From the IMG/VR virus record IMGVR_UViG_3300037110_000087, positions 243,125 to 307,124 of that record: a stretch of 64,000 bases of DNA; one strand, given 5' to 3'. The notes under the pieces are model-generated. The model saw only the letters and a program-made list of their open reading frames with translations, was not told the origin of the DNA and searched no databases. Position 1 is the stretch's first letter, and each line of letters opens with the position of its first letter. Below are positions 416 to 64,000 of the stretch, piece after piece. A program made the translations under genes and the position numbers.

Positions 416-967
416 CTAACCCTGTTCTACTTTAACCATGACTTTCGCTCTGGCTTTATCAATAATCTGTTGGAACTTATCATAGAGATGTGCCCTTGGA
501 CTCATTGGTAATCTGACCAATATCAATCCAGCTTCTTCCACTGTTTTGTTACCCTTCTTTTGATTGTGGATCCGGCAGCATGCCACCAGATTCTTCCAAG
601 TGGAGCTTCCTCCACGACTACTTGGGATCAGATGGTCCAGGGTATTCCCGGTTCGGGTACATTGTAATCCAGTGGTTTCATCAATATACTGACATTTATA
701 ATCATCTCTTCTCAAGATACTGCGTGATCCATCACCAAGAAGTTTAACTTCAGGGACCGCAGCGACCTGATGGTAGACAATAATCTCAAATGGTTTGAGA
801 ATGTCTTCTAGTTTGTTTGAGGTAGAAAAGTCATAGGGATTTAAGATAACCGCTCTACCATTGATTATTGCCTTAACACAATGATACCGGCCCAATTCAC
901 AGATAGGAAGGTAGTTTCGATCTAGAGCTATGATTGGGGATCGTTTATGAAATTTTCCCTTGTGCAT
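416..967 (-). CDS. HNH endonuclease
   Basis: CQY...TLDHLIPSSRGG.STWKNLVACCRIHNQKKG motif. Confidence 0.9.
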   Translation of the reverse strand: MHKGKFHKRSPIIALDRNYLPICELGRYHCVKAIINGRAVILNPYDFSTSNKLEDILKPFEIIVYHQVAAVPEVKLLGDGSRSILRRDDYKCQYIDETTGLQCTRTGNTLDHLIPSSRGGSSTWKNLVACCRIHNQKKGNKTVEEAGLILVRLPMSPRAHLYDKFQQIIDKARAKVMVKVEQG

Positions 968-1020
968 TTTAGCTTCTTAAAATATGCTACACTAGAATAA
1001 CCATTATTGATTGTATACGC

Positions 1021-1050
1021 AAAGGCCCCAGCAGGGAAGCCAGGGCCTTT
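1021..1050. terminator. intrinsic terminator-like hairpin
   Basis: AAAGGCCC-N14-GGGCCTTT just downstream of the 1068..1682 gene. Confidence 0.6.
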
Positions 1051-1067
1051 ACGATGGGCGAACCGGA

Positions 1068-1682
1068 CTAAAAGTCTGAACAGTTGGCCTGAACACCCTC
1101 ATAGAACTTCTGGAAGTCCTTGAAGGTCACTTCGATCGTACCAGACTCAATGCGACCATAACGACGATGGTCGATCCCCATGTAGGGGGCCACATCAGAG
1201 GCGCGAAGGCTTCTCTGAAGACGGATCACCGTCATCAGTTCATGGAGAGGACGATTGGCGTTTTCGAGGGCCTCCACCATCTTATTGGCACGTTCGGGGG
1301 TAGTGGAGGAGATCCCATTGACGACACGACTGATGACATCGCGCTTGTTGCCCAGGAGCAAACTGGCGACACGGACGTCAGCATTGGGATTCTGCTTGAC
1401 AGCAGTACGGACGAGATCGACTGGATTTCTGTTGGTTCTGGCCATTTCAGGCTCCTTAGATGCGGCTTCTTCAGCACATTGATTGTAAAGATGTTCGAGC
1501 ATCGTTTCGAATTCCTCTTCCTTATGCTCCATGATCGAAGCGTCAGCGGAATTTAGAAGATCGAGACATTCTTGTGTAGTCAGGCCAAAAACGGCAGTCT
1601 GACCAATATTGAGGGAACGAGCAATTCGTTCGGCTTCAGCCAGATCGACTGGAACCACGAGGCAAATAACACATGAATCCAT
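1068..1682 (-). CDS. XRE-family HTH protein
   Basis: C-terminal IRLQRSLRASDVAPYMGIDHRRYGRIESG HTH_3-like pattern. Confidence 0.7.
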   Translation of the reverse strand: MDSCVICLVVPVDLAEAERIARSLNIGQTAVFGLTTQECLDLLNSADASIMEHKEEEFETMLEHLYNQCAEEAASKEPEMARTNRNPVDLVRTAVKQNPNADVRVASLLLGNKRDVISRVVNGISSTTPERANKMVEALENANRPLHELMTVIRLQRSLRASDVAPYMGIDHRRYGRIESGTIEVTFKDFQKFYEGVQANCSDF

Positions 1683-2438: not shown

Positions 2439-2834
2439 TTAATAGAGTCCTTGAGTAATGGTATCGGGAGTCTTGGTGATTTGTGCCTTACCAGTGACAA
2501 TACCATCTGTGGTATCAGCCAGCGCATATACTTCAACAGGTGCTTCTTCAAAGAAAAGAATCATCCCCGCCTTAAACTGCCCATCGGAATTTTCATAGTT
2601 ACCAACTACCTTGAGGGTCCTGAGAGTAAGACCCTCCTTGTTCTTGATTGAGAAGGTCACATCATTAACTCGTTCTGGATAACAAGCTGTCTCGTCACCA
2701 TATTCAACCACCATGGAAAGATATCTATCAACCAACCTTGCAGAGCAACCAAGTTTAAGCATAATTACCTCTATTCTATTGTACCAGCTCCTATAAGACG
2801 AGGGACCACCCTGGACAGTGATCCCTCTTCCCAA
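2439..2834 (-). CDS. hypothetical protein
   Basis: ORF in operon-like minus-strand run. Confidence 0.65.
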   Translation of the reverse strand: MGRGITVQGGPSSYRSWYNRIEVIMLKLGCSARLVDRYLSMVVEYGDETACYPERVNDVTFSIKNKEGLTLRTLKVVGNYENSDGQFKAGMILFFEEAPVEVYALADTTDGIVTGKAQITKTPDTITQGLY

Positions 2835-2848
2835 TCAGTTCAAGTCAG

Positions 2849-4894
2849 TTATTCACTCTCGTTGATCGCGGCGAACAAGGCTCCCTTAGCGATGGTATTA
2901 AGGGGATCATCAGCCATGACAATCTTGTTGCCGGTCAAGAAGGAAATCTCCCTGGTAGCAGCGATCTTCTGAAATAGTTCCTTGAATCCCTTGGGAATCG
3001 CAGTACCACCAGCGATAGCGATCACAGGGGTATCAATCTCAGGCTTCTCTTCCATCCCATTCCAGGCAGCCGCGATCTGATCAAGCACGTAACCAATGAG
3101 ATGCGTGTAATAGTGGACAACCGCTTCCTGAACGTTGTCCTTGGGGTTCAGGAGATCCGTAGTTTCCTTAGCGCTCATAGCTTTGAGGACGCTCACATTT
3201 ACGGCTCTGGCAACATTTTCATCAATGTAGTCACCGGAGGCCGCGATACTGAAGGATAGCTTTGGCATTTCTTTGCCGAAGACCGCACCACTGACATTCA
3301 TCATACCCGCACCGCAGTTATGGACGCAGACACCAGGAAGAGAAAACGAAGGGTCATTCTCAACTGATAAATCATATACCCATCCGGTGTATTCTTCTTG
3401 CTTTACAGACTTGATCTTATTAAGTCTGTAACCACCAATTCTCTTATGTAGCTCTGAACCAATCGGACTGTCCAGAAGTGACTGAAGCATCCGTTTATTC
3501 GATCCGGTTACAACTACCTCATATACGGTCTTTTTTCCAGAGATCTGTCTTCCCCTGATTAATCCATCATTCCTCGGTTTTCTAGATTTAAATCTAGAAC
3601 TAATTCCCAGGATTCCCAAGGCTTGATGTAAGAAGACCGACAGATCAGAACTAGTGTTGGAAAACGAAATGGTTTCTTGCCCAAAACATCCATCGCTGTT
3701 CAACAGACCATTAACAATCCCAGTAAGAACAGGCAGACTGAGACTTTCGACCTTAAATGGAACCACTTTATTGCCACTATGATAGCAGTGGTTCAAAAGC
3801 CAGCGTGAAAGACCCGCGTAACCCATAGTCAGTCGGATATTATTCCTGTTTCCTCTACTGATCTGAGAAATTTCTCTATCGAAAACAGAACAAGACATCT
3901 TGTAATCTTCCACAAGATCTTGTTCATTTGGACCAAGATCAAGAATTACTGAAGTTTCCCTGGTATCGATATGCCCATCACCAAGGAAATATCCAAGAAA
4001 TTTGCCCAGATTGTAAGACATTTCGAATGTCTTATTGAACTGCTTCCCATTACCAATTCTATCTTTAAAACTGATGAAATTCCTTTTCTGATTGTGATTG
4101 ATTACTGGTTCGCCCACGACATCATCTTTTTTCAGGGAATCCACTCTTTTCCATTTCCAGGACCCACCTTCCAGGACATCTACAAGATGATCTCCAGTCA
4201 GACAAAGTTCTCTACCAGCAATCTTTAGTTTGTAGATTAACTCAGACCGTCCGGTTCTTGTGGTCTTATACACCTGATTCCAAGAACCATTTTTGCTAAG
4301 AACCAAGTCCCCTTCCTCAATGTCCTCAATGTCCTTAACGCCCCCATTGCAGAAGACTTCCTGACCAGGAAGAAGGCAGCTGATGCCAATGCCGGTTAGG
4401 TTCTCATCCAGTAGTTCACTATAGATGACGCAAAGACCCTCACGGAGCGCTACCGGTCTGTAACCAAGCTCAGTAAGCATTTTCTTGAAGACCGCTTCAT
4501 GATAGACCGCATTGAATTCCGCATCCACCGGGTTAGCAGGGACACTGAAATAAAGCAGTTCATTCGGTTCCGCAGGATCACCCAGGACCTGTTTGATGAT
4601 AGCTAGCATGATAGGGGTAGCATTCGGGTCATGAGGATTCAATACGCCCTTAGCCATGGGCCGCTTTGGAGACTGATTAAACGCCTTGGCCAACTGCATG
4701 GCCTCTTCACCCAGGGCGTAAATCTTTCCGTTCATCTGAACGTAAGGAACACCAGCCTTCTTGAGCATACTTAGCACGAGTGGATTTCTATCCAATTCCA
4801 CATACATATTACGAACACGGTTGAAGATGTATTCGTCGTCTTTCATGATTGCCCCGACGACACCGCCGGTACCAATGTCAAGACCCTTTGCCAT
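2849..4894 (-). CDS. actin-fold ATPase (MreB/FtsA/ParM-like) containing an intein
   Basis: N-terminal GLDIGTG (phosphate 1), FSVPA, GIGIS|CGAGMMNV after splicing (phosphate 2), IAGGTAIPKGF (adenosine), DPLNTIAKGAL; 327 aa after intein removal. Confidence 0.85.
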   Translation of the reverse strand: MAKGLDIGTGGVVGAIMKDDEYIFNRVRNMYVELDRNPLVLSMLKKAGVPYVQMNGKIYALGEEAMQLAKAFNQSPKRPMAKGVLNPHDPNATPIMLAIIKQVLGDPAEPNELLYFSVPANPVDAEFNAVYHEAVFKKMLTELGYRPVALREGLCVIYSELLDENLTGIGISCLLPGQEVFCNGGVKDIEDIEEGDLVLSKNGSWNQVYKTTRTGRSELIYKLKIAGRELCLTGDHLVDVLEGGSWKWKRVDSLKKDDVVGEPVINHNQKRNFISFKDRIGNGKQFNKTFEMSYNLGKFLGYFLGDGHIDTRETSVILDLGPNEQDLVEDYKMSCSVFDREISQISRGNRNNIRLTMGYAGLSRWLLNHCYHSGNKVVPFKVESLSLPVLTGIVNGLLNSDGCFGQETISFSNTSSDLSVFLHQALGILGISSRFKSRKPRNDGLIRGRQISGKKTVYEVVVTGSNKRMLQSLLDSPIGSELHKRIGGYRLNKIKSVKQEEYTGWVYDLSVENDPSFSLPGVCVHNCGAGMMNVSGAVFGKEMPKLSFSIAASGDYIDENVARAVNVSVLKAMSAKETTDLLNPKDNVQEAVVHYYTHLIGYVLDQIAAAWNGMEEKPEIDTPVIAIAGGTAIPKGFKELFQKIAATREISFLTGNKIVMADDPLNTIAKGALFAAINESE
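3317..4378 (-). mobile_element. intein (354 aa) with LAGLIDADG homing endonuclease
   Basis: Starts CLLPGQEV (Cys1); block B LTGDH; LGYFLGDG and GLLNSDG LAGLIDADG motifs; VYDLSVENDPSF...VHN end followed by Cys+1. Confidence 0.93.
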
Positions 4895-4913: not shown

Positions 4914-5222
4914 TTAGAACTCGATTTCATGTCCACCGCAAACGCCACAGATAGAATCATCCCGGCCCATTTCGAACCCATCTCCAGCGAAAGATCTCAG
5001 GGGAAGCCTGACCTCAAGGGTTCGCCCAGAAGTAATTTCGCCCAGCACTCCATCACCGAAGGTATCAGCGATTTCCTGGCATTTATCAGGATATTTCTTA
5101 AGCAAAGACATCCATGACAGCATGCTCATGGTTACAAATTCGACTCTGTAACCACCTCTATCGTAGGCATCCGCCTTAGCGATGATTTCATTGGGGCCAT
5201 ATTTTACTTCAAACTGATCCAT
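4914..5222 (-). CDS. hypothetical protein
   Basis: ORF directly upstream of actin-like gene. Confidence 0.65.
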   Translation of the reverse strand: MDQFEVKYGPNEIIAKADAYDRGGYRVEFVTMSMLSWMSLLKKYPDKCQEIADTFGDGVLGEITSGRTLEVRLPLRSFAGDGFEMGRDDSICGVCGGHEIEF

Positions 5223-5679
5223 TTGGTTCTCCTTTGGATTTTTTAAACTTAGCTTTGAGATCTGCTGCGGACATTCCCTTCTGTTTCGAACTGTCTACTT
5301 TAATATCACTCTCACTAACAGGTTCGAAACTCGGAACAAATACATCACCCGATGGTCCAGAAGGTTTAACCTCTGGTGTGGCTCCCACTACTACCACCTG
5401 CTGTGGCGGAGTGGCCTTAAGTGCACGAATCTCCTCCATCATTTTGGTCTGCATGATCAGCAGTTGTTCCATCATATTATTATCAGCTGGGATCTCAGGA
5501 GCATCTGGAATAAAATCAAACCTATAGATATTATTTAGTTCCTGCCAACCTTTGGGCAAAGAATTAACCGCAACGACAACAGAGTCACCAGGATTAAGAT
5601 AACTGCTAGCGAACCAGCAAGCTATCCCGCCTCCCTTTTGCACCTGATGGCTTATATTGGTTACTCTTACTTGTGTCAT
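5209..5679 (-). CDS. hypothetical protein with low-complexity C-terminus
   Basis: ORF in run; Pro/Val-rich linker and basic tail. Confidence 0.7.
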   Translation of the reverse strand: MTQVRVTNISHQVQKGGGIACWFASSYLNPGDSVVVAVNSLPKGWQELNNIYRFDFIPDAPEIPADNNMMEQLLIMQTKMMEEIRALKATPPQQVVVVGATPEVKPSGPSGDVFVPSFEPVSESDIKVDSSKQKGMSAADLKAKFKKSKGEPNGSV

Positions 5680-9036: not shown

Positions 9037-10013
9037 TTCTGCTCCAATGCTCTCATAGCCTTCATCTTCTTCCTTTCCAGAAAAACTTCAGAGGGCAGAT
9101 AAACCCATCTTAAGATTGAATCAACTCTCTGAGTTGCGATGTAGTAGAAATCTTTGTCCTTCTTCTTATGAATTATTGGATGAAGGGGCAGCAGTTCAAC
9201 AATTTGTTCAATAAATCCAAGAGATGCTGATCCGAAACTAAACGTCCATCTGCCTTTACTCTCCGAGATACACCCATCCCCCTCAATGCAACCCCGGATG
9301 AAATCTCTCTGATATTGTTCTGGTATTTTATCCAGAACTATTTTCAAGCCAGAGGTCTTCCGGGGTACAATCCCATAAGATCGCAGGCTATCATTTAGAT
9401 GATCGGAATAGACGCACCAGCTAGTGGTTTTGAGACGCTCGTTTGATCTACAGGTCCCACCAATGAAGCTATGAAACGATTCAGTGATCTCTTTGTCCTT
9501 AATATTCAGGGAAAGCGTAACCCCACGTTGACCCCTTCGAGTTCCTTTGTCTCTGACACATCCGTCTGTGGCCATCCATCCCAAGGCCCATGCTTTTTCA
9601 GCGCAGTCGATTATATCAAACCAATACTCGTTAACTGGATTTTTCTCTTTTGCCAACTCACTTATAGATTTAATAGGCATCTTTAGTTCATTCAGCCTGT
9701 TTGTGATTGCAATCTGGCTGATACCAATGGTATTGGATATACCCTTTATGCTCTGACCTTTACTATAGAGATCAGAGATCAGATTACTTTGACGACTAAT
9801 TTCCTCAATTCTTTGCTCTGACCTTGACTGGACACCCGCCTTCTTTACGTGGCCCGCTACTGTCTGGCTAGACACACCAAATTCCCGTCCCAGGATGCTC
9901 GGTGATTCCCCATTCACATATCTTTCGACGATTTGGTTAATCTGATCTTTTGATAGCACAATCACACTCCCTGAATTCAGTTTATCACCGAGTCCAAGGA
10001 GTGTGTTTTGCAT
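9027..10013 (-). mobile_element. free-standing LAGLIDADG homing endonuclease with N-terminal HTH repeats
   Basis: AWALGWMATDGC and FIRGCIEGDGCI motifs; IDCAEKA lead-in. Confidence 0.88.
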
Positions 10014-51595: not shown

Positions 51596-53194
51596 ATGTC
51601 CATCAATAACCGTAGAACTACTCCCCTAGTTCCCTCTGCCATCGCTGTGGCCCAGGCTACCGCCCACAAGAATCATATGGCTGGCAATAGCTGGGAAATT
51701 ACCCCTATCACCCGTCTGAAGTGCATGGCGAGTTCCTGCTTCTTCGGAGAGCCGACCTATTACAACCCCAAAGTGGCTAGCTATGGCCACTTCTACGAGG
51801 GCAGCTTTCTGGGCCAGACCATGTTTGGCAAGGAATGGCATGGTTTAAATCCTGCGCAGAAGTTGGAGAAGGCGATCGATGAGGCCCTCGATTATGATGC
51901 TGAGGCGACTCTCGATTACGCTTTCGAACTGCGTACTCAGTTGAACATCCGTGCCACCCCTCAGGTGATCGCGGTCCGTGCGGCTAATATGGTTTCCCTC
52001 AAGGGTCAGGGAATCCGCCAGTATGCACTGGCTACCATTCAGCGTCCAGATGATGCTGCCACTCAGTTCGCCTACCATGTCGCCAAGTATGGCAAGAACG
52101 CTCCCATTCCCAACGCTCTCAAGAAGGCGTGGCGTGAGTATCTGATCAAGTGCACCGAATATGACTTGGCCAAATACCAGCTGGCCAGCAAGGAAGTCAA
52201 GATGGTCGACCTAATCAATATGGTCCGGCCCAAGAGCGAAGCTATCGACAAGTTCATGAAGGGCACCCTGTCCAACACCGGCAAGACCTGGGAAGCCATC
52301 ATCAGTGGTGGTGGCAGGTGGGATGAAGCGGTTGAAGTGATGGGTCACATGGCTCTGCTGCGCAATTTGCGCAACTTCGTCGAGAAGAGTGATGAAACCA
52401 CTCAGCGTAAGGTTGCTGACAAGCTGGTTGCTACTGCAGCCAAGGGTCATCAGCTGCCTTTCCGCTACTGGTCTGCCTTTAACGCCCTAGTCGAAGGTGG
52501 ACGGAGAGCACCCGGTTTCATGCTGGATGCAGTCGAGAATGCCCTGCGTGTCTCTCTGGGCAATCTACCCCGATTGCAGGGTAACAGCCTAGTGCTGTCG
52601 GACAATTCCGGTAGCGCTCGTCATGCCTTCCAGAGCAAAATGGGTTCAGTCCAGATCTCCACCATCGGTAACCTGCTGGCTGCGATCGTCGGCAAGATCT
52701 CCGATAATGCCAGAATTGGGGTATTCGGTGACCGGCTGTCCTGTGTCGAATCCCGTAAGTCCAGTTCGGTGTTCGATGACCTGAAGACTCTGAATAACCT
52801 AGGCGAAGGAGTCGGCCAGGGAACTGAGAATGGCATCTGGCTGGCGCTCCATCAGGCTATCGCGGAACGCGAACATTGGGATAATATCTTCGTCTGCAGC
52901 GATATGCAAGCCGGTCATGGTGGGCTTTATGGTTGTGGCGTCATCCCCAGCGAATACCTGTGGCGTACCAACAACCAGGGCTATGGTGCGGCCAGCAGCC
53001 CGGTCACCATTGATGTTCCTTACATGCTGCACAAGTACCGGAAGATCAATCCCAATGTCAACGTGTTCCTGATCCAGACCGCTGGATACGAGGACACCAT
53101 CATCCCTGAATACTTCGATCGCACCTACGTGATCGGGGGATGGAGTGATGGGGTGATCCACTTCGCTGATCAGATGATCAAGCTGCGTCAATGA
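51596..53194 (+). CDS. Ro60/Rsr TROVE-vWA RNA-binding protein
   Basis: N.MAGNSW, FFGEPTYY, R..LNIR..P, IQRPDD, MALLRNLRN, QLPFRY..A, VLSDNSGS MIDAS, SDMQ. Confidence 0.9.
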   Translation: MSINNRRTTPLVPSAIAVAQATAHKNHMAGNSWEITPITRLKCMASSCFFGEPTYYNPKVASYGHFYEGSFLGQTMFGKEWHGLNPAQKLEKAIDEALDYDAEATLDYAFELRTQLNIRATPQVIAVRAANMVSLKGQGIRQYALATIQRPDDAATQFAYHVAKYGKNAPIPNALKKAWREYLIKCTEYDLAKYQLASKEVKMVDLINMVRPKSEAIDKFMKGTLSNTGKTWEAIISGGGRWDEAVEVMGHMALLRNLRNFVEKSDETTQRKVADKLVATAAKGHQLPFRYWSAFNALVEGGRRAPGFMLDAVENALRVSLGNLPRLQGNSLVLSDNSGSARHAFQSKMGSVQISTIGNLLAAIVGKISDNARIGVFGDRLSCVESRKSSSVFDDLKTLNNLGEGVGQGTENGIWLALHQAIAEREHWDNIFVCSDMQAGHGGLYGCGVIPSEYLWRTNNQGYGAASSPVTIDVPYMLHKYRKINPNVNVFLIQTAGYEDTIIPEYFDRTYVIGGWSDGVIHFADQMIKLRQ

Positions 53195-55174: not shown

Positions 55175-55279
55175 CCAACAGTAGTGATCGGAACGGTTAC
55201 TTCCCTACCAAACAAGAGAAAAACGGGTTCGCCCGTTGTCGTGGGTAAAACCACTCTCCGTTCCCCCTTTCTCTGTTGG
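55175..55279 (+). ncRNA. Y-RNA-like (Yrl-type) RNA, reduced core, copy 1
   Basis: CCAACAG/CTGTTGG outer stem, bulged nt, GGAACGG/CCGTTCC inner stem, GGTTACTTC motif, pyrimidine-rich 3' strand. Confidence 0.65.
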
Positions 55280-55291
55280 AAGCAATTCAGC

Positions 55292-55390
55292 GGCAGTAGT
55301 GATTGAAATGGTTACTTCGGATAAGCATCAGGTGTTGAGCCTGACTGGCGCGGTCGTCGAAGACCGCTACCCATTTCGCCTTTCTCTGTT
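55292..55390 (+). ncRNA. Y-RNA-like RNA, reduced core, copy 2
   Basis: GGCAG/CTGTT, GAAATGG/CCATTTC, GGTTACTTC. Confidence 0.65.
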
Positions 55391-56634: not shown

Positions 56635-56746
56635 GGGGGAGTAGCTCAGCATTGCATAGAGCGCTGCAGATCAGTCCAGATATCCATGGTTCCGTCTGGA
56701 GGAAATCCGCAGAGGGCGGCGGTATCAAATCCTCTCTCCCCTACCA
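56635..56746 (+). ncRNA. tRNA-like RNA with 41-nt expanded anticodon loop
   Basis: GGGGGAG/CTCCCCT-A-CCA, GCTC/GAGC D-arm, CTGC/GCAG stem, internal TCCAGA/TCTGGA hairpin, degenerate T-arm. Confidence 0.7.
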
Positions 56747-57358: not shown

Positions 57359-57435
57359 GCGGGGGTAGCTCAGAGAAAGAGCAGCAGGGACAATATCCTT
57401 GAAGGTCGGAGGTTCAAGTCCTTCCCCCCGCACCA
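57359..57435 (+). ncRNA. tRNA-like RNA with non-canonical anticodon loop (ACAATAT)
   Basis: GCGGGGG/CCCCCGC-A-CCA, normal D and T arms; no U33. Confidence 0.75.
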
Positions 57436-57492: not shown

Positions 57493-57571
57493 GGCGGGGT
57501 AGCTCAGATGCATTAAGAGTACCGGCTAATTAAGCTGGAAGTCAGGGTCTTGCAAACCCTCCCCGCCACCA
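57493..57571 (+). ncRNA. tRNA-like RNA (loop TAATTAA, T-loop CTTGCAA)
   Basis: GGCGGGG/CCCCGCC-A-CCA; CCGGC/GCTGG; altered T-loop. Confidence 0.7.
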
Positions 57572-57579
57572 GTACAAGT

Positions 57580-57662
57580 CTTTCAGCAGTGATTGGAACG
57601 GTTACTTCAAATGTGATTGAGCCGTGGGGCAACCCACTCTCCGTTTCGCTTTTCTCTGAAAG
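57580..57662 (+). ncRNA. Y-RNA-like RNA, minimal core, copy 3
   Basis: CTTTCAG/CTGAAAG, GGAACGG/CCGTTTC, GGTTACTTC. Confidence 0.65.
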
Positions 57663-57725: not shown

Positions 57726-57796
57726 GGGCGGGTACCTCAGATGCGATAAGAGGTCCTCCAAGGAAGTCGGTGTGTTGCAAGCACTCCCGCCCACCA
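57726..57796 (+). ncRNA. tRNA-like RNA with vestigial anticodon arm
   Basis: GGGCGGG/CCCGCCC-A-CCA; CCTC/GAGG D-arm; CCT-CCA-AGG mini arm; T-loop GTTGCAA. Confidence 0.7.
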
Positions 57797-57839
57797 ATCT
57801 CAAAATCCTGACCCTGTAGTCTTGCTCCTATAACGAGCG

Positions 57840-58399: not shown

Positions 58400-58570
58400 C
58401 GGCGGATAGCTCAGTTGGAGTTATCAGAGCGCCACATCAAGGAAAAGTAGAAGAAAACTTGGGGCAAAAGCTGAGTGAATTCGCGACGATCTCACTGAGT
58501 AGCCTAGAGCAGAGTATTCTAACCAGTACTAGTGTGGAGGGCGGTGGTTCAAATCCATCTCCGTCGACCA
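58400..58570 (+). ncRNA. tRNA-like RNA with 96-nt anticodon-loop insert
   Basis: CGGCGGA/TCCGTCG-A-CCA; CCACA/TGTGG; GGTGG-TTCAAAT-CCATC. Confidence 0.75.
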
Positions 58571-60658: not shown

Positions 60659-60734
60659 GGATCGGAAGCTATATTGGTTTAGCGCTGGCGTGAAGTCCCA
60701 GAGGATGCAGGTTCGAAGCCTGTCCGATCCACCA
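60659..60734 (+). tRNA. tRNA-Phe(GAA)
   Basis: GGATCGG/CCGATCC-A-CCA; loop GTGAAGT; C31-C39 mismatch. Confidence 0.75.
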
Positions 60735-61774: not shown

Positions 61775-61984
61775 TCCAATCGACTCCCTGCGGCGGTTCA
61801 ATTTAACCCGCCCTACTGAGCGATGATATGCATACTCGGCGGCGACCGACTTCCGGATGGCCCAGTGAAGTTTCAGTCCGGAGATTTTGAGAAGTCCACC
61901 CACTTAAGACCGTATCCAAGTCTGTAATTGTTTCTCTTTGGGGATCCGACAGATAAGGCTAGTGGATGAAACGGTTTCCTTTTG

Positions 61985-62072
61985 GTAAGGGTCGATGACC
62001 CATGCAAAGGTAGAGCGGCCACCATGCTTGGCCCTCTGGAGGTTTGCTCCGGAGAAAAACAACGACTCTACC
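61985..62072 (+). ncRNA. 88-nt structured repeat, copy B
   Basis: Same motif with compensatory changes. Confidence 0.6.
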
Positions 62073-62479
62073 ATCCATTTCGTGCCTTTCTACCCCGACC
62101 AAGGATGATTGACACGACTCTATGGGGATGAACAGATTCGACAGGTTTATGCCCTGAGTGTAGCGCAGGTAGAGGAAACCGATGGCCTCTCAAAAATCGG
62201 TAAAAACACAACTGCCGAAGACTTTCTTCTCCAGGCTGCGTAAGCAGCATCCTCTAAGCGATCGTTTGGTAGCTTAGTTGTAAGGAATCTCAAGGATGGT
62301 TCGCCTACCGAGAGAGTTCACAAACTAGATTCCGATGAAATGTTCTAGTCGGAATGACACAAAGGACATAAGTCCTCGATTAGAGTTGTCCGGTTTACTC
62401 TACAGAGGTCACTAGAAACGGACTAAACCTGTGAATGAACTACCTTAGGAATTTTCTTGGACAGGACTAGCATAAGTCC

Positions 62480-63043
62480 TCATCTCCACCTTGTTTGGCT
62501 AGTGCGTCCGTCCCAATCACCAAACAGACCGAGCGCATTAGCCTTCCTCATGCCTTCACAGACCACGAGCCAAGCGTTATAAGGCATAATTCCCCTGGTC
62601 ACATTACATCGGTAACAAGCAGGGACCACGTTGCCCTTCGTGTGACCTTTAGAATTGTCAATTCTATCTAATGTCATATTGGTGATAAGGTTGTCACCAC
62701 AGTAAAAGCAAGGATTAGAAATTTGTGCCAAAATAAATTTGACATCCAGATCCGAGACCCTTTTCTTCTTCTTGTCCGCTGATTTACAATATTTGAGAAT
62801 TAAGGCAGCGCGGACTTCTAAATTGGTTGACCTAGTTTCAATCTTCCTCTGAATTGATCTTCTTTGCGCTGCTTCTGGTGTAGTTTTCATTTTCTTGTAG
62901 GATAATCTTCTCAGATTGTCGCAGGTCTTACAAAGAGAGCGAAAGTATCTGACTCCTTTGATGGTTTGGGCGTAAGGCTTAACTTCGGGATATTTCTTAT
63001 TGCAACCAGAACACTGCCAAGATTCTAAGGTGATTCTTTCCAT
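62480..63043 (-). mobile_element. HNH homing endonuclease
   Basis: CFYCGD...TLDRIDNSKGH...NVVPACYRCN. Confidence 0.85.
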
Positions 63044-63622
63044 TGGTGGACCTCTCCATTAAGTATAACATTTCACTAGTCCACCAACGGTTATAATATC
63101 TTTAGGAGTAGTGATGAACAAAATTAGAGTACAAAATCTTTTGACCAGAATTTCTAGGCTCGTTCAGCAGGAACGATTGGACAAACCATCCTTGAGGCAC
63201 CGTTCCATGCCTAACCCGCAGACCCCTCAAGAGTATGCAAGACGGGAGATTGGCTTAGAGGTAGCCATTCTTTAAAGAGTGACAAGGACGATCCATAAGG
63301 GGGTAATCGGTGCGGGGCGACACCCTTGATCCGTTAGCCGAACTCAGTATAAGTCCAGGGGAAGAATAGCGGACAGTCTTCAACAAGTAGTGGGTATTAC
63401 ACCGGTATCCAGTTAAGTCGAACGGGAAGTGTTCAGAACCAATCGGCAGTTGAAGGACCCTTAGAGTCTTTGGTGTAATAACACACCTTCTTGCAGACCG
63501 CTGGTATGGAGCGGAATAAAAGAGTCCATAACAAAGCAGATTCCGTAGTCGTCATCTGAAAAGACCCTCGACTGGAGCGATCAAAGTCTGCCATGTTGGT
63601 TGATCATCTAGACCAATTTCTT

Positions 63623-63735
63623 TGGCTCATACCTCAGCTGGTAGAGGGCTCGCCTGAATCGTTATCGTAGTTTCGGACTGCGAATAACCTGTAGTAAGCG
63701 AGATGTCGGTGGTTCGACTCCACCTGGGCCAACCA
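63623..63735 (+). tRNA. tRNA (Ile-like body) with 44-nt anticodon loop containing an intron-like hairpin
   Basis: TGGCTCA/TGGGCCA-A-CCA; CTCGC/GCGAG; GGTGG-TTCGACT-CCACC; insert GTTAT-CGTAG..CTGCG-A-ATAAC. Confidence 0.75.
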
Positions 63736-63857
63736 GACCCCGCTACGCCTCTGCTAAGAACCTGCATCCTTCACCGGACCAGACCCACTAGCATGCGCAC
63801 CAAGAGAAGCCGGTAACGGAGATCGCCAGGAAGCAAGGCCTGGAATGGGGGGAATCA

Positions 63858-64000
63858 ATCGCTAGTGACCGACTGGTAAGGTCGTCCCTGATGGGGACGT
63901 AAATGCGCGGGTTCGAGTCCCGCTCTTGAAGGTAACTTCGGGATAGCTCAGGTGGTAGAGCCGTCGTGGACGTTAAAATGTGGGTTCAAATCCTGCCTAG
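63858..64000 (+). ncRNA. double tRNA-like element, truncated by window end
   Basis: D1-AC1-T1, acceptor hairpin TCTTGAA-GGTAAC-TTCGGGA, then D2-AC2-T2. Confidence 0.6.

What the first reader, a model, noticed from the sequence alone, without database searches (positions are those of the whole stretch)
63858..64000. Double-elbow tRNA: two D/T units joined by a loop-closed acceptor stem
Seen: D1 (GACC/GGTC), AC1 (GTCCC-TGATG-GGGAC), T1 (GCGGG-TTCGAGT-CCCGC), then TCTTGAA-GGTAAC-TTCGGGA (7-bp acceptor-like hairpin), D2, a 3-nt-loop AC2, T2, then CTAG. That CTAG could pair with the 5' ATCGCTAG. Inference: a fused or permuted tRNA dimer presenting two elbows, extending the YrlA principle. Prediction: bases after 64000 continue roughly CGAT and may end in NCCA.
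Basis: partly seen in the sequence, partly recalled or inferred. Interest (0 to 1): 0.7.

Follow-up and report, generated by a model that had tools for sequence, protein, structure and literature searches.

The report
Nested double tRNA-like RNA in phage
The last 142 bases of this jumbo-phage contig encode most of an RNA built from two tRNA-shaped halves, one tucked inside the other's anticodon arm, an architecture that recurs with compensatory base changes in other phages and that I did not find described in the papers I could search.

Summary
It is neither chance nor a tandem tRNA pair, because neither unit can close its own acceptor stem. The window is the 3' end of a 307-kb peat virus contig, so the element is cut about 8-12 nt short.

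- **Core (T1, 7-bp loop-closed hairpin, D2):** it matches Rfam YrlA below threshold and resembles the YrlA region of Mycobacterium phage Snenia.
- **Relatives:** complete elements with the same order of arms occur in two other ~323-kb phages (seven copies) and in one marine metagenome contig.
- **Fold in relatives:** only a nested fold pairs. An outer tRNA-like domain (acceptor, D1, T2, often encoded ACCA) has its 5-bp "anticodon" stem capped by a circularly permuted inner tRNA-like domain (T1, hairpin, D2). 98.6% of cells pair and 27 of 35 pairs change on both sides.
- **Fold in the window:** nested and local-hairpin pairings are both possible.
- **3' end:** the last four bases, CTA+G, fit the relatives' outer stem, which has a bulged G.
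- **Expression:** one metatranscriptome holds a discrete contig over the element.
- **Ro60 link:** two complete phages carrying such elements have no Ro60 gene, so this is probably not a classical Y RNA.

Function is unknown. My best guess is a non-decoding, bivalent tRNA mimic.

The parts
63859..63865 (+). Outer acceptor stem, 5' strand (TCGCTAG). The last three bases pair with CTA at 63997-63999. The partners of the first four lie beyond the contig end.
   Evidence: Sequence. ARAGORN starts its call here. Relatives have a covarying 7-bp outer stem.
63866..63882 (+). U8-like T, then the D1 arm (GACC/GGTC, or ACCG/AGGT in the tRNA register). The loop contains GG.
   Evidence: Sequence. The Rfam tRNA model aligns 63866-63923 to tRNA positions 8-63 (19.2 bits).
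63883..63887 (+). Stem A, 5' strand (CGTCC). It pairs long-range with GGACG at 63968-63972 (nested model), or locally with GGACG at 63895-63899 (AC1 hairpin).
   Evidence: Relatives allow only the long-range pairing, with changes on both sides in all 5 pairs.
63888..63895 (+). 5' side of the internal loop between stems A and B (CTGATGGG). In the local fold it is a 7-nt anticodon-like loop, CUGAUGG, with U33 and anticodon GAU.
63896..63899 (+). Stem B, 3' strand (GACG). It pairs with CGTC at 63962-63965 and corresponds to the 4-bp closing stem of the YrlA consensus.
   Evidence: YrlA consensus structure. L127 elements 1 and 2 have TCGA/TCGA and GATTG/CAATC here.
63900..63906 (+). Variable-region analogue of the inner domain (TAAATGC).
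   Evidence: Sequence, position relative to T1.
63907..63923 (+). T1 arm of the inner domain (GCGGG-TTCGAGT-CCCGC).
   Evidence: Rfam YrlA alignment. My own T-arm scan.
63924..63943 (+). Loop-closed inner acceptor stem: TCTTGAA / TTCGGGA, 7 bp, with loop GGTAAC.
   Evidence: Sequence and fold. The Rfam YrlA acceptor-like hairpin aligns here. Six of nine family members have exactly 7 bp.
63944..63961 (+). TA (U8/A9 analogue) and the D2 arm of the inner domain (GCTC-AGGTGGTA-GAGC).
   Evidence: Rfam YrlA alignment.
63962..63972 (+). Stem B 5' strand (CGTC), 2-nt loop (GT), stem A 3' strand (GGACG). Alternatively the local hairpin CGTC-GTG-GACG.
   Evidence: nested -33.0 against local -36.4 kcal/mol.
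63973..63979 (+). Variable-region analogue of the outer domain (TTAAAAT).
   Evidence: Sequence.
63980..63996 (+). T2 arm of the outer domain (GTGGG-TTCAAAT-CCTGC, with two G-U pairs).
63997..64000 (+). Start of the outer acceptor 3' strand. CTA pairs with TAG at 63863-63865. G sits at the position of the bulge seen in relatives. The remainder (predicted about GCGA+ACCA) is cut off by the contig end.
   Evidence: Bulged 3' strands followed by ACCA in L127 and L131.

Best explanation
The element is the gene, lacking only its last ~8-12 nt, for a non-decoding composite RNA made of two tRNA-like domains nested tail to tail.

**Architecture**
- The outer domain uses the RNA's own 5' and 3' ends as a 7-bp acceptor stem, probably with a bulged G, stacked on T2. 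D1 stacks on a short 'anticodon' stem (stem A).
- Stem A carries no anticodon loop. It leads, through a small internal loop and stem B, into an inner domain that is circularly permuted like the tRNA-like module of YrlA Y RNAs: variable region, T1, a 7-bp acceptor stem closed by a loop, U8/A9, then D2.
- Each domain keeps the D-loop GG and the T-loop TTCRA needed to form a tRNA elbow, so the RNA should display two elbows.

**Status of each step**
- Shown: the arms and their order; the impossibility of two ordinary tRNAs; the same architecture with compensatory changes in other phages; discrete presence in one RNA library.
- Inferred from relatives: closure of the outer stem, an ACCA 3' end, and the nested rather than local pairing.
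- Inferred from established tRNA biology and from M. smegmatis YrlA (PMC4201824): RNase P matures the 5' end at 63858/63859. It may also open the 7-bp inner hairpin, which would then receive CCA, giving a two-piece RNA with two acceptor ends.
- Speculative: the RNA acts as a stable bivalent tRNA mimic. It would be a decoy or adaptor for proteins that recognise tRNA shape, such as processing and modification enzymes, host tRNA-targeting defence nucleases, or in this phage its Ro60 homologue. It would not act as a decoder.
For: **Anatomy**
- The anatomy is verified.
- The core matches Rfam YrlA at 28.1 bits, E 5e-4.
- It is 77% identical over 73 nt to the Snenia/Lumos element, which lies downstream of gene 54 (annotated 'RNA-binding protein') and scores 39.3 bits over the full YrlA model.
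- Cis acceptor pairing fails: 2 of 7 for unit 1, and there is no complement for unit 2.

**Relatives with the same order of arms**
- L127: four copies in a complete 322,570-bp phage.
- L131: three copies in a 323,678-bp phage.
- L223: one copy in a marine metagenome contig. It scores 59.8 bits with model R2, which was not trained on it.

**Covariation in relatives**
- In these relatives local AC hairpins cannot form. The long-range stem A always can: CTGCC/GGCAG, CTGTC/GACAG, CCGTC/GACGG, CGATC/GATCG, CCCCG/CGGGG, CCCTC/GAGGG, CTCCC/GGGAG, CCGGT/GCCGG.
- On alignment A5, 98.6% of cells pair and 27 of 35 pairs change on both sides. None of 500 shuffles reach this, and partners slid by one column pair at 48-50% (A4).
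- The window has CGTCC/GGACG at the homologous place.

**3' end and hairpin length**
- The window's CTA+G matches the relatives' pattern of three pairs followed by a bulge. With Watson-Crick pairs only, the chance of this is about 1 in 256.
- The inner hairpin is exactly 7 bp in six of nine members.

**Expression**
- Metatranscriptome X20 holds a 155-nt contig covering 63836-63990 and one over the tmRNA. It holds nothing on three flanking stretches.
Against: - The 3' strand of the outer stem is missing, so closure rests on four bases plus analogy.
- In the window the local hairpins (AC1 with a canonical 7-nt loop, U33 and purine 37; AC2 with a 3-nt loop) are 3.4 kcal/mol better than the nested stems. 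The unconstrained MFE (-50.5 kcal/mol) is a different fold again, and the region's z-score is only -0.94.
- Family model R2 aligns the truncated window element in a wrong register, so membership rests on my manual parse.
- The window's variable regions (7 nt, A/T-rich) and its D1 differ from those of relatives.
- The covariation alignments are fitted to the model, and they contain paralogues from only two genomes plus L223.
- The RNA evidence is one low-depth contig (3.8) from assembled contigs. It gives no end mapping.
- No function has been tested.
Confidence: 0.55

Rival explanations
1. It is a YrlA-class Y RNA of the phage's own Ro60 (TROVE) protein. The tRNA-like part is the effector module, and a Ro60-binding helix is formed by flanks that are partly beyond the contig end.
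For: - A TROVE-domain ORF lies at 51596-53194.
- The core matches Rfam YrlA and the Snenia element downstream of gene 54, which is annotated 'RNA-binding protein' and has a vWA domain.
- Chen et al. 2014 report YrlA RNAs in phages (PMC4201824).
Against: - The element is 10.7 kb from the TROVE gene. Chen et al. accepted only candidates within 4 kb.
- Three better Y-RNA-like repeats lie 2-4.4 kb downstream of the gene. They share a CAGTAGTGAT..GGTTACTTC 5' strand and a CTCCGTT..CTTTCTCTG 3' strand. That motif is absent from the element's 5' flank.
- The score of 28.1 is far below Rfam's gathering score of 69.
- Phages G001 and G006, both complete and both carrying such elements, have no TROVE match.
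- Where YrlA has its Ro60-binding stem, this RNA has D1, T2 and an acceptor stem.
Confidence: 0.13
2. It is one stretch of an open chain of permuted T-hairpin-D modules (tandem YrlA-like units) that continues past the contig end. D1 and T2 belong to neighbouring units, and the CTAG match to the 5' strand is chance.
For: - Such chains exist in L013, L025, L126 and L224.
- Only 3-4 bases of the proposed closure are visible.
- The assembly graph forks exactly at 64000, as could happen at repeated modules.
Against: - There is no T arm or hairpin partner upstream of TCGCTAG. The nearest upstream T arm is at 63708, inside the preceding tRNA. D1 would therefore be an orphan with an unpaired 5' strand.
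- In the chains each unit is closed by its own short stem next to its own T and D arms. Here the strands next to D1 and T2 are complementary to each other, as in the closed relatives.
- No k-mer of 16 nt or more from the last 160 nt recurs in the genome.
Confidence: 0.12
3. It is a nested tRNA gene. The inner permuted unit is an intron-like insert in the anticodon region of the outer tRNA. Cutting and rejoining would release one or two decoding tRNAs, as with permuted or intron-bearing tRNA genes of archaea and algae.
For: - L127 element 1 has a perfect anticodon loop (ATTCTAA, UCU) on the 5' side of its internal loop, and element 2 has CTGCTAG next to stem B.
- The window's local AC1 has a 7-nt loop with U33 and purine 37.
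- The neighbouring tRNA at 63623-63735 carries a ~40-nt insert whose removal would give a CTGAAAA Phe loop.
- Several insert-bearing tRNA-likes occur in all three phages.
Against: - The simplest members (L127 el0, L131 a, c and d, L223) have no loop nucleotides at all between stem A and the inner unit, so no anticodon loop could be regenerated.
- No bulge-helix-bulge motif is evident.
- From general knowledge, no protein-dependent tRNA splicing endonuclease is known in bacteria or their phages.
- Loop candidates are inconsistent between copies.
Confidence: 0.08
4. It is a decayed pair of tandem tRNA genes (pseudogenes), and the cross-complementarity is accidental.
For: - Each half has the ordinary gene order D-AC-variable-T.
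- The halves resemble each other (GACG-T(T)AAA(A)T-G.GGGTTC), which suggests a tandem duplication.
- Chen et al. warn that tRNA dimers mimic YrlA in searches (PMC4201824).
Against: - The 3' strand of unit 1 and the 5' strand of unit 2 form a perfect 7-bp stem only 6 nt apart, while neither unit pairs in cis.
- The same swapped arrangement recurs in four lineages with compensatory changes.
- The sequence is identical across samples, and it is present in an RNA library.
Confidence: 0.05

Closest known systems
YrlA Y RNAs (Rfam RF02553; Chen et al. 2014, PMC4201824; structure preprint 10.1101/312249)
   Same: The inner module has the same permuted order: short closing stem, variable region, T arm, loop-closed acceptor-like stem, UA, D arm. 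It also has near-consensus T and D sequences. The 7-bp acceptor stem is like that of M. smegmatis YrlA, which RNase P cuts and which receives CCA.
   Different: No Ro60-binding helix is seen. The closing stem leads into a second tRNA-like domain (D1, T2, free acceptor ends, ACCA in relatives). The score is below Rfam's threshold. The element is 10.7 kb from the Ro60 gene, and relatives occur in phages without Ro60.
D. radiodurans Yrn1-type Y RNAs and the L125 phage Y RNA (D arm, stem-loop, T arm inside the Y stem)
   Same: The outer domain has this unpermuted orientation. The RNA's ends form the acceptor-like stem, with D on the 5' side and T on the 3' side.
   Different: The outer stem here is a 7-bp tRNA-type acceptor that ends in ACCA in relatives, not a long Ro60-binding helix. 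The central stem-loop is replaced by a whole permuted tRNA-like unit.
tmRNA
   Same: Both have a tRNA-like domain whose acceptor stem is made from the RNA's two ends, with a T arm and a large structured insert where the anticodon arm would be. Both have an encoded ACCA. Two relatives (L127 el1 and el2) even have G3:U70 with A73.
   Different: There is no reading frame, no pseudoknots and no Rfam or ARAGORN tmRNA call. The phage's real tmRNA is at 62124-62491. The D arm is canonical, and the insert is another tRNA-like unit.
Circularly permuted and intron-bearing tRNA genes (Cyanidioschyzon merolae type; archaeal bulge-helix-bulge introns)
   Same: In the inner unit the 3' half of a tRNA-like unit precedes its 5' half, and the two are joined through the acceptor stem. 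The unit is inserted in the anticodon region of the outer one.
   Different: No regenerable anticodon loop is seen in most members, and no bulge-helix-bulge motif. The host system is bacterial or phage, where such splicing is not known.
Tandem (dimeric) tRNA precursors
   Same: Two D-AC-variable-T units lie head to tail in a tRNA-rich region.
   Different: The acceptor strands are swapped between the units. Neither unit can fold as a tRNA on its own, and only 6 nt separate the two inner acceptor strands.

Membership tests
YrlA (Rfam RF02553) | Permuted tRNA-like module: T arm, loop-closed acceptor-like stem, UA, D arm, enclosed by a short stem | tested here: met
   cmscan aligns 63906-63961 to model positions 30-81. 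A GACG/CGTC closing stem is available.
YrlA (Rfam RF02553) | Score at or above Rfam's gathering threshold (69 bits) over the full model | tested here: not met
   28.1 bits, model positions 30-81 only. Even the Snenia element reaches only 39.3 bits.
YrlA (Rfam RF02553) | Terminal helix formed by the 5' and 3' ends that carries the Ro60-binding site | tested here: inconclusive
   The 3' flank is beyond the contig end. The 5' flank lacks the motif shared by the window's three Y-RNA-like repeats. Where YrlA's stem would begin, D1 and T2 are found instead.
YrlA (Rfam RF02553) | Encoded next to a Ro60/TROVE gene (within 4 kb in Chen et al. 2014) | tested here: not met
   The TROVE ORF ends at 53194 and the element starts at 63859, a distance of 10.7 kb. 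G001 and G006, which carry relatives, have no TROVE match.
YrlA (Rfam RF02553) | Bound by Ro60 in vivo | not testable with these tools
   This needs immunoprecipitation.
Canonical tRNA / tandem tRNA pair | Each unit's own 5' and 3' strands form a 7-bp acceptor stem | tested here: not met
   TCGCTAG against TCTTGAA gives 2 of 7 pairs. TTCGGGA has no complement in the CTAG after T2. Rfam tRNA matches only positions 8-63, at 19.2 bits against a threshold of 29.
Canonical tRNA / tandem tRNA pair | 7-nt anticodon loop on a 5-bp stem in each unit | tested here: not met
   Unit 1 can form one (CGTCC-CTGATGG-GGACG). Unit 2 has only a 4-bp stem with a 3-nt loop.
tmRNA | tRNA-like domain plus tag reading frame and pseudoknots, recognised by ARAGORN or Rfam | tested here: not met
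   There is no tmRNA call at 63858-64000. The tmRNA is at 62124-62491.
Nested double tRNA-like elements of L127, L131 and L223 (undescribed group defined here) | Order: 5' acceptor strand, U8, D1, stem A, (stem B), variable, T1, loop-closed 7-12 bp stem, U8, D2, (stem B), stem A, variable, T2, 3' acceptor strand | tested here: met
   Manual parse with all pairs checked, compared with relatives.
Nested double tRNA-like elements of L127, L131 and L223 (undescribed group defined here) | Strand after D1 complementary to strand before T2 (5-bp stem A) | tested here: met
   CGTCC at 63883-63887 with GGACG at 63968-63972. The same strand can also pair locally, so this is possible but not exclusive.
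Nested double tRNA-like elements of L127, L131 and L223 (undescribed group defined here) | Outer 7-bp acceptor stem closed by the RNA's two ends, mostly with a 1-2 nt bulge after the third pair, then ACCA | tested here: inconclusive
   Only CTA+G is visible. It fits (three pairs, then G), but the rest is cut off.
Nested double tRNA-like elements of L127, L131 and L223 (undescribed group defined here) | Recognised in the correct register by the family covariance model (R2) | tested here: not met
   R2 gives 21.9 bits, but with D2 forced onto the T2 columns because the 3' end is missing.

The most novel reading that the evidence does not exclude
Jumbo phages encode a previously unrecognised class of 'double-L' RNAs: an outer tRNA body whose anticodon arm is replaced by a circularly permuted second tRNA body. 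[quoted passage not shown] Some members may be chargeable, since two carry G3:U70 with A73. The phage uses them as bivalent tRNA mimics against host tRNA-directed defences, or to recruit tRNA-binding enzymes.
Probability: 0.2. Interest if true: 0.85.

Novelty: new variant of a known kind. Interest (0 to 1): 0.68.

Why it matters
Known tRNA mimics (tmRNA, YrlA/Yrn1 Y RNAs, viral tRNA-like structures, the recently described skipping-rope family) each present one tRNA-like body.

An RNA that nests a permuted tRNA-like body inside the anticodon arm of another would be a new way of building with the tRNA fold. Here it has covariation support, recurs in unrelated phage contigs, and lies among phage tRNA, tmRNA and Y-RNA-like genes.

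It would show that the YrlA module is a portable unit, used outside Ro60 systems. It would give structural biologists a natural two-elbow scaffold. It would also point to an untested layer of the phage-host conflict over tRNAs.

It is a practical warning for annotation as well. ARAGORN calls half of the element a tRNA-Ile, and YrlA searches discard such loci as tRNA dimers.

Tried and rejected
**Attempts to read the missing 3' end all failed.**
- The contig start (GGCCGAGGTCGATG...) does not continue the element, and there is no terminal overlap.
- Exact-pattern scans for the junction and for the last 26-29 nt found nothing in viral or metagenome contigs.
- Look-ups of neighbouring proteins returned only the same JGI contig, or Logan contigs that stop at the same base or begin at contig position 359.
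- Read laying shows two unitigs continuing past 64000 (233 nt at depth 15, 639 nt at depth 6) but does not print them.

**Alignment and model problems**
- MAFFT alignments of the elements were not structurally correct. I therefore seeded a covariance model from one sequence and iterated.
- Models R1 and R2 match every ordinary tRNA through local ends, so only matches longer than ~110 nt were informative.
- R2 mis-registers the truncated window element. It also splits L127 elements 1 and 2, which have stem B.

**Searches that led nowhere**
- A scan for bulged-G 3' ends (AGGTC..TTCRANT..G....ACCA) returned mostly unrelated tRNAs with an extra base in the T stem. Only L127 and L131 (and the 79-nt L136) were relevant.
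- L133 and L155 long matches proved to be ordinary tandem tRNAs.
- No promoter-like or terminator-like site was found in 63300-64000.
- Thermodynamic folding alone does not recover tRNA-like folds here, nor fully in relatives (20-37 of 34-46 model pairs).
- Literature searches for YrlA, permuted tRNA plus phage, tRNA-like plus jumbo phage, huge phages plus tRNA intron, and tRNA mimic plus elbow found no description of this architecture.

**Not run:** Complex prediction, because no protein-RNA binding claim is made.

Full report
**Where the window lies.** The window is bases 243,125-307,124 of a 307,124-bp IMG/VR virus record. CheckV estimates it 98% complete, and it has no end repeats. It comes from a peat metagenome, JGI sample 3300037110. 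The finding therefore sits on the last 142 bases of the record, and the element is cut by the contig end. The contig start does not continue it. In an independent Logan assembly of the same sample, the unitig also stops at base 64000. Two different unitigs (233 nt at depth 15, 639 nt at depth 6) overlap its last 30 bases, so the assembly graph forks exactly there. I could not read those unitigs with the tools available.

**The observation.**
- 5' strand TCGCTAG at 63859-63865, then a T at the U8 position.
- D1, with GG in its loop.
- A stem-loop that is either GTCCC-TGATG-GGGAC or, in the tRNA register, CGTCC-CTGATGG-GGACG.
- T1 (GCGGG-TTCGAGT-CCCGC).
- A 7-bp hairpin, TCTTGAA-GGTAAC-TTCGGGA.
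- TA, then D2 (GCTC-AGGTGGTA-GAGC).
- CGTC-GTG-GACG.
- T2 (GTGGG-TTCAAAT-CCTGC), then CTAG.

ARAGORN calls 63859-63930 a tRNA-Ile(gat). Its 'acceptor stem' pairs at only 2 of 7 positions, and Rfam's tRNA model matches only positions 8-63, at 19.2 bits. The second unit's 5' strand, TTCGGGA, has no complement in the CTAG that follows T2.

**Identity of the core.** Rfam's YrlA model aligns to T1, the hairpin and D2 (63906-63961) at 28.1 bits, E 5e-4 for the stretch searched. The gathering score is 69. A distant blastn search of the phage collection finds the same junction in eight Mycobacterium phage records (Snenia, Lumos and others) at 77% over 73 nt. In Snenia the match lies in an unannotated gap just downstream of gene 54, annotated 'RNA-binding protein' and carrying DUF2828, DUF7788 and vWA domains. 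There YrlA scores 39.3 bits over the full model. Chen et al. 2014 (PMC4201824) describe YrlA's tRNA-like module in exactly this order: T arm, acceptor-like stem-loop, D arm. They show that the 7-bp version in M. smegmatis is cut by RNase P and receives CCA. They also warn that tRNA dimers mimic YrlA in searches.

**Relatives with the whole architecture.** A pattern for T1, a 14-30 nt gap, D2, a short gap and a second T loop finds only two viral contigs, two metagenome contigs and one bacterial contig.
- L127 comes from a complete 322,570-bp phage with terminal repeats. It carries four consecutive elements (minus strand 2527-2398, 2378-2219, 2200-2029, 2007-1843) with the same order of arms as the window.
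- A scan for their unusual 3' ends found L131, from a 323,678-bp phage, with three more.
- L223, a marine metagenome contig, holds another at 643-782.
- In these complete elements the 5' strand before D1 pairs with the strand after T2 to form a 7-bp acceptor stem. In L127 and L131 that stem has a 1-2 nt bulge (mostly G) after its third pair and is followed by an encoded ACCA. L223 has neither the bulge nor CCA.

**Nested, not local, pairing.** Instead the five bases after D1 pair with the five before the variable region of T2 (stem A). The observed pairs are CTGCC/GGCAG, CTGTC/GACAG, CCGTC/GACGG, CGATC/GATCG, CCCCG/CGGGG, CCCTC/GAGGG, CTCCC/GGGAG and CCGGT/GCCGG.

In L127 elements 1 and 2, a second stem (TCGA/TCGA, GATTG/CAATC) pairs the strand after D2 with the strand before the variable region of T1 (stem B). 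The two units are thus nested: an outer tRNA-like body whose anticodon stem is capped by a circularly permuted inner body. In the simplest members one 5-bp helix serves as the 'anticodon stem' of both bodies, read in opposite polarity.

I seeded a covariance model from one element and iterated it. The resulting model aligns these elements consistently, and it recognises L223, which it had never seen, at 59.8 bits.
- On the nine-row alignment A5, 98.6% of cells form standard pairs.
- 27 of 35 pairs change on both sides. That includes all 7 pairs of the outer acceptor stem, all 5 of stem A and 6 of 7 in the inner hairpin.
- None of 500 shuffles reaches these values, and sliding the partners by one column drops pairing to about 48-50% (the seven-row version is).

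There are three caveats. The alignment is fitted to the model. Most rows are paralogues from two genomes. Two rows (insert-type elements) were forced onto the inner columns.

**The window's element under this model.** CGTCC (63883-63887) can pair with GGACG (63968-63972) as stem A. GACG (63896-63899) can pair with CGTC (63962-63965) as stem B, leaving an 8/2-nt internal loop. Because CGTC and GACG each occur twice, the local hairpins are equally possible. They are 3.4 kcal/mol more stable by nearest-neighbour rules (-36.4 against -33.0). Neither fold is the unconstrained MFE, which is common for tRNA-like sequences. By homology of architecture I favour the nested fold, but the window alone cannot decide. 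The visible end, CTA followed by G, matches the relatives' pattern of three pairs then a bulge.

**Expression.** In the peat metatranscriptome run X20, assembled contigs cover the tmRNA (62140-62574, depth 30.6) and the stretch 63836-63990 (155 nt, no differences, depth 3.8). Nothing covers 61900-62112, 62610-63460 or 63620-63816. This discrete pattern argues for a stable RNA rather than carried-over DNA. It is, however, a single low-depth contig with no information on RNA ends.

**Relation to Ro60.**
- The window encodes a TROVE-domain protein at 51596-53194.
- Three repeats with a shared Y-RNA-like stem (5' CAGTAGTGAT.GGAA.GGTTACTTC, 3' CTCCGTT..CTTTCTCTG) lie at 55179-55275, 55294-55388 and about 57577-57660.
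- These repeats, not the element at 63859, look like this phage's Ro60 partners.
- The two complete phages with the clearest double elements have no TROVE match.

I therefore do not file the element as a Y RNA. It works like YrlA in its inner module, but several of YrlA's defining features were tested and not met.

**What it most likely does.** The region from 53 to 64 kb is a zoo of tRNA-shaped genes: ordinary tRNAs, a tmRNA, and at least three tRNA bodies with long inserts in the anticodon arm (56635-56746, 58403-58570, 63623-63735). The double element fits a theme in which a tRNA body serves as a processing and stability scaffold for something placed in its anticodon arm. Here that something is a second tRNA elbow. 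I commit to a non-decoding, bivalent tRNA mimic that is matured like a tRNA. Its 7-bp inner hairpin may be opened by RNase P. Its target is unknown. Candidates are tRNA-processing or modifying enzymes, host tRNA-directed nucleases, or Ro60. This last step is speculation.

**Novelty.** Full-text searches found YrlA, its structure, three new bacterial tRNA-mimic families and jumbo-phage surveys. None describes a tRNA-like RNA nested inside another. I rate it a new variant of a known kind (tRNA mimics of the YrlA/tmRNA type). Confidence in the architecture is moderate, and confidence in function is low.

Noticed in passing
window 62124-62491: Phage-encoded tmRNA (Rfam 86.2 bits). RNA-library contigs cover it in four metatranscriptomes.
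   Followed up: partly
window 63623-63735: tRNA (Rfam 50.8 bits, normal 7-bp acceptor, encoded ACCA) with a ~40-nt insert in the anticodon loop. Removing the insert would leave CTGAAAA, a Phe-GAA loop, although a normal tRNA-Phe is at 60659-60734.
   Followed up: partly
window 56635-56746 and 58403-58570: Two more tRNA bodies with long inserts (about 45 and 105 nt) in place of the anticodon loop. The second has acceptor CGGCGGA/TCCGTCG with G3:U70, A73 and CCA, the alanine and tmRNA-like identity set.
   Followed up: partly
window 55179-55275, 55294-55388, ~57577-57660: Three repeats with a shared Y-RNA-like terminal stem (5' CAGTAGTGAT.GGAA.GGTTACTTC, 3' CTCCGTT..CTTTCTCTG) lie 2-4.4 kb downstream of the TROVE (Ro60-like) gene at 51596-53194. 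They are likely the phage's Y RNAs. Rfam did not call them.
   Followed up: partly
window ~63340-63613: An RNA of about 240-270 nt is present as contigs in five peat or permafrost metatranscriptomes and ends just before the insert-bearing tRNA. It has no Rfam match at E up to 1.
   Followed up: partly
window 63245-63281: A 37-nt segment matches (2 differences) very abundant RNA contigs of other organisms (depth up to 1409), whose flanks differ from the window. It is a conserved piece of an unidentified RNA.
   Followed up: no
window 64000 (contig end): The Logan unitig graph forks exactly at the last base. Two alternative continuations (233 nt at depth 15, 639 nt at depth 6) exist, so the contig end is an assembly break at a variant site, not a genome end.
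   Followed up: partly
window 57359-57435, 57493-57571, 57728-57797: A tRNA with the rare anticodon AAT (Ile), and two short tRNA-like genes with unusual TTGCAA-type T loops that end in ACCA.
   Followed up: no
L127 2527-1843 and 1098-961 (minus); L131 6571-5532 (minus): In these two ~323-kb phages, every tRNA body that carries an insert or an inner tRNA-like unit has a 1-2 nt bulge (mostly G) in the 3' strand of its acceptor stem. The neighbouring ordinary tRNAs that I read (one in each phage) have none. L127 elements 1 and 2 have G3:U70 with A73.
   Followed up: partly
L013 ~5130-5300; L025 ~2740-2950 (minus); L126 ~480-640 (minus); L224 ~1000-1200 (minus): Open chains of two or more permuted T arm, hairpin, D arm modules (tandem YrlA-like units). 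This is a different way of putting several tRNA elbows on one RNA.
   Followed up: partly
L125 9020-9130 and ~9140-9210: A relative of the window's Ro60 gene (44% identity, 175-kb phage) has, about 0.9 kb upstream of it, a Y RNA with an unpermuted D-anticodon-T body inside the Y stem (Yrn1-like), and a second Y-like stem-loop.
   Followed up: no
L225 ~2550-2630 (minus), Taibaiella koreensis: A bacterial YrlA-like module is followed directly by a second T arm and hairpin.
   Followed up: no
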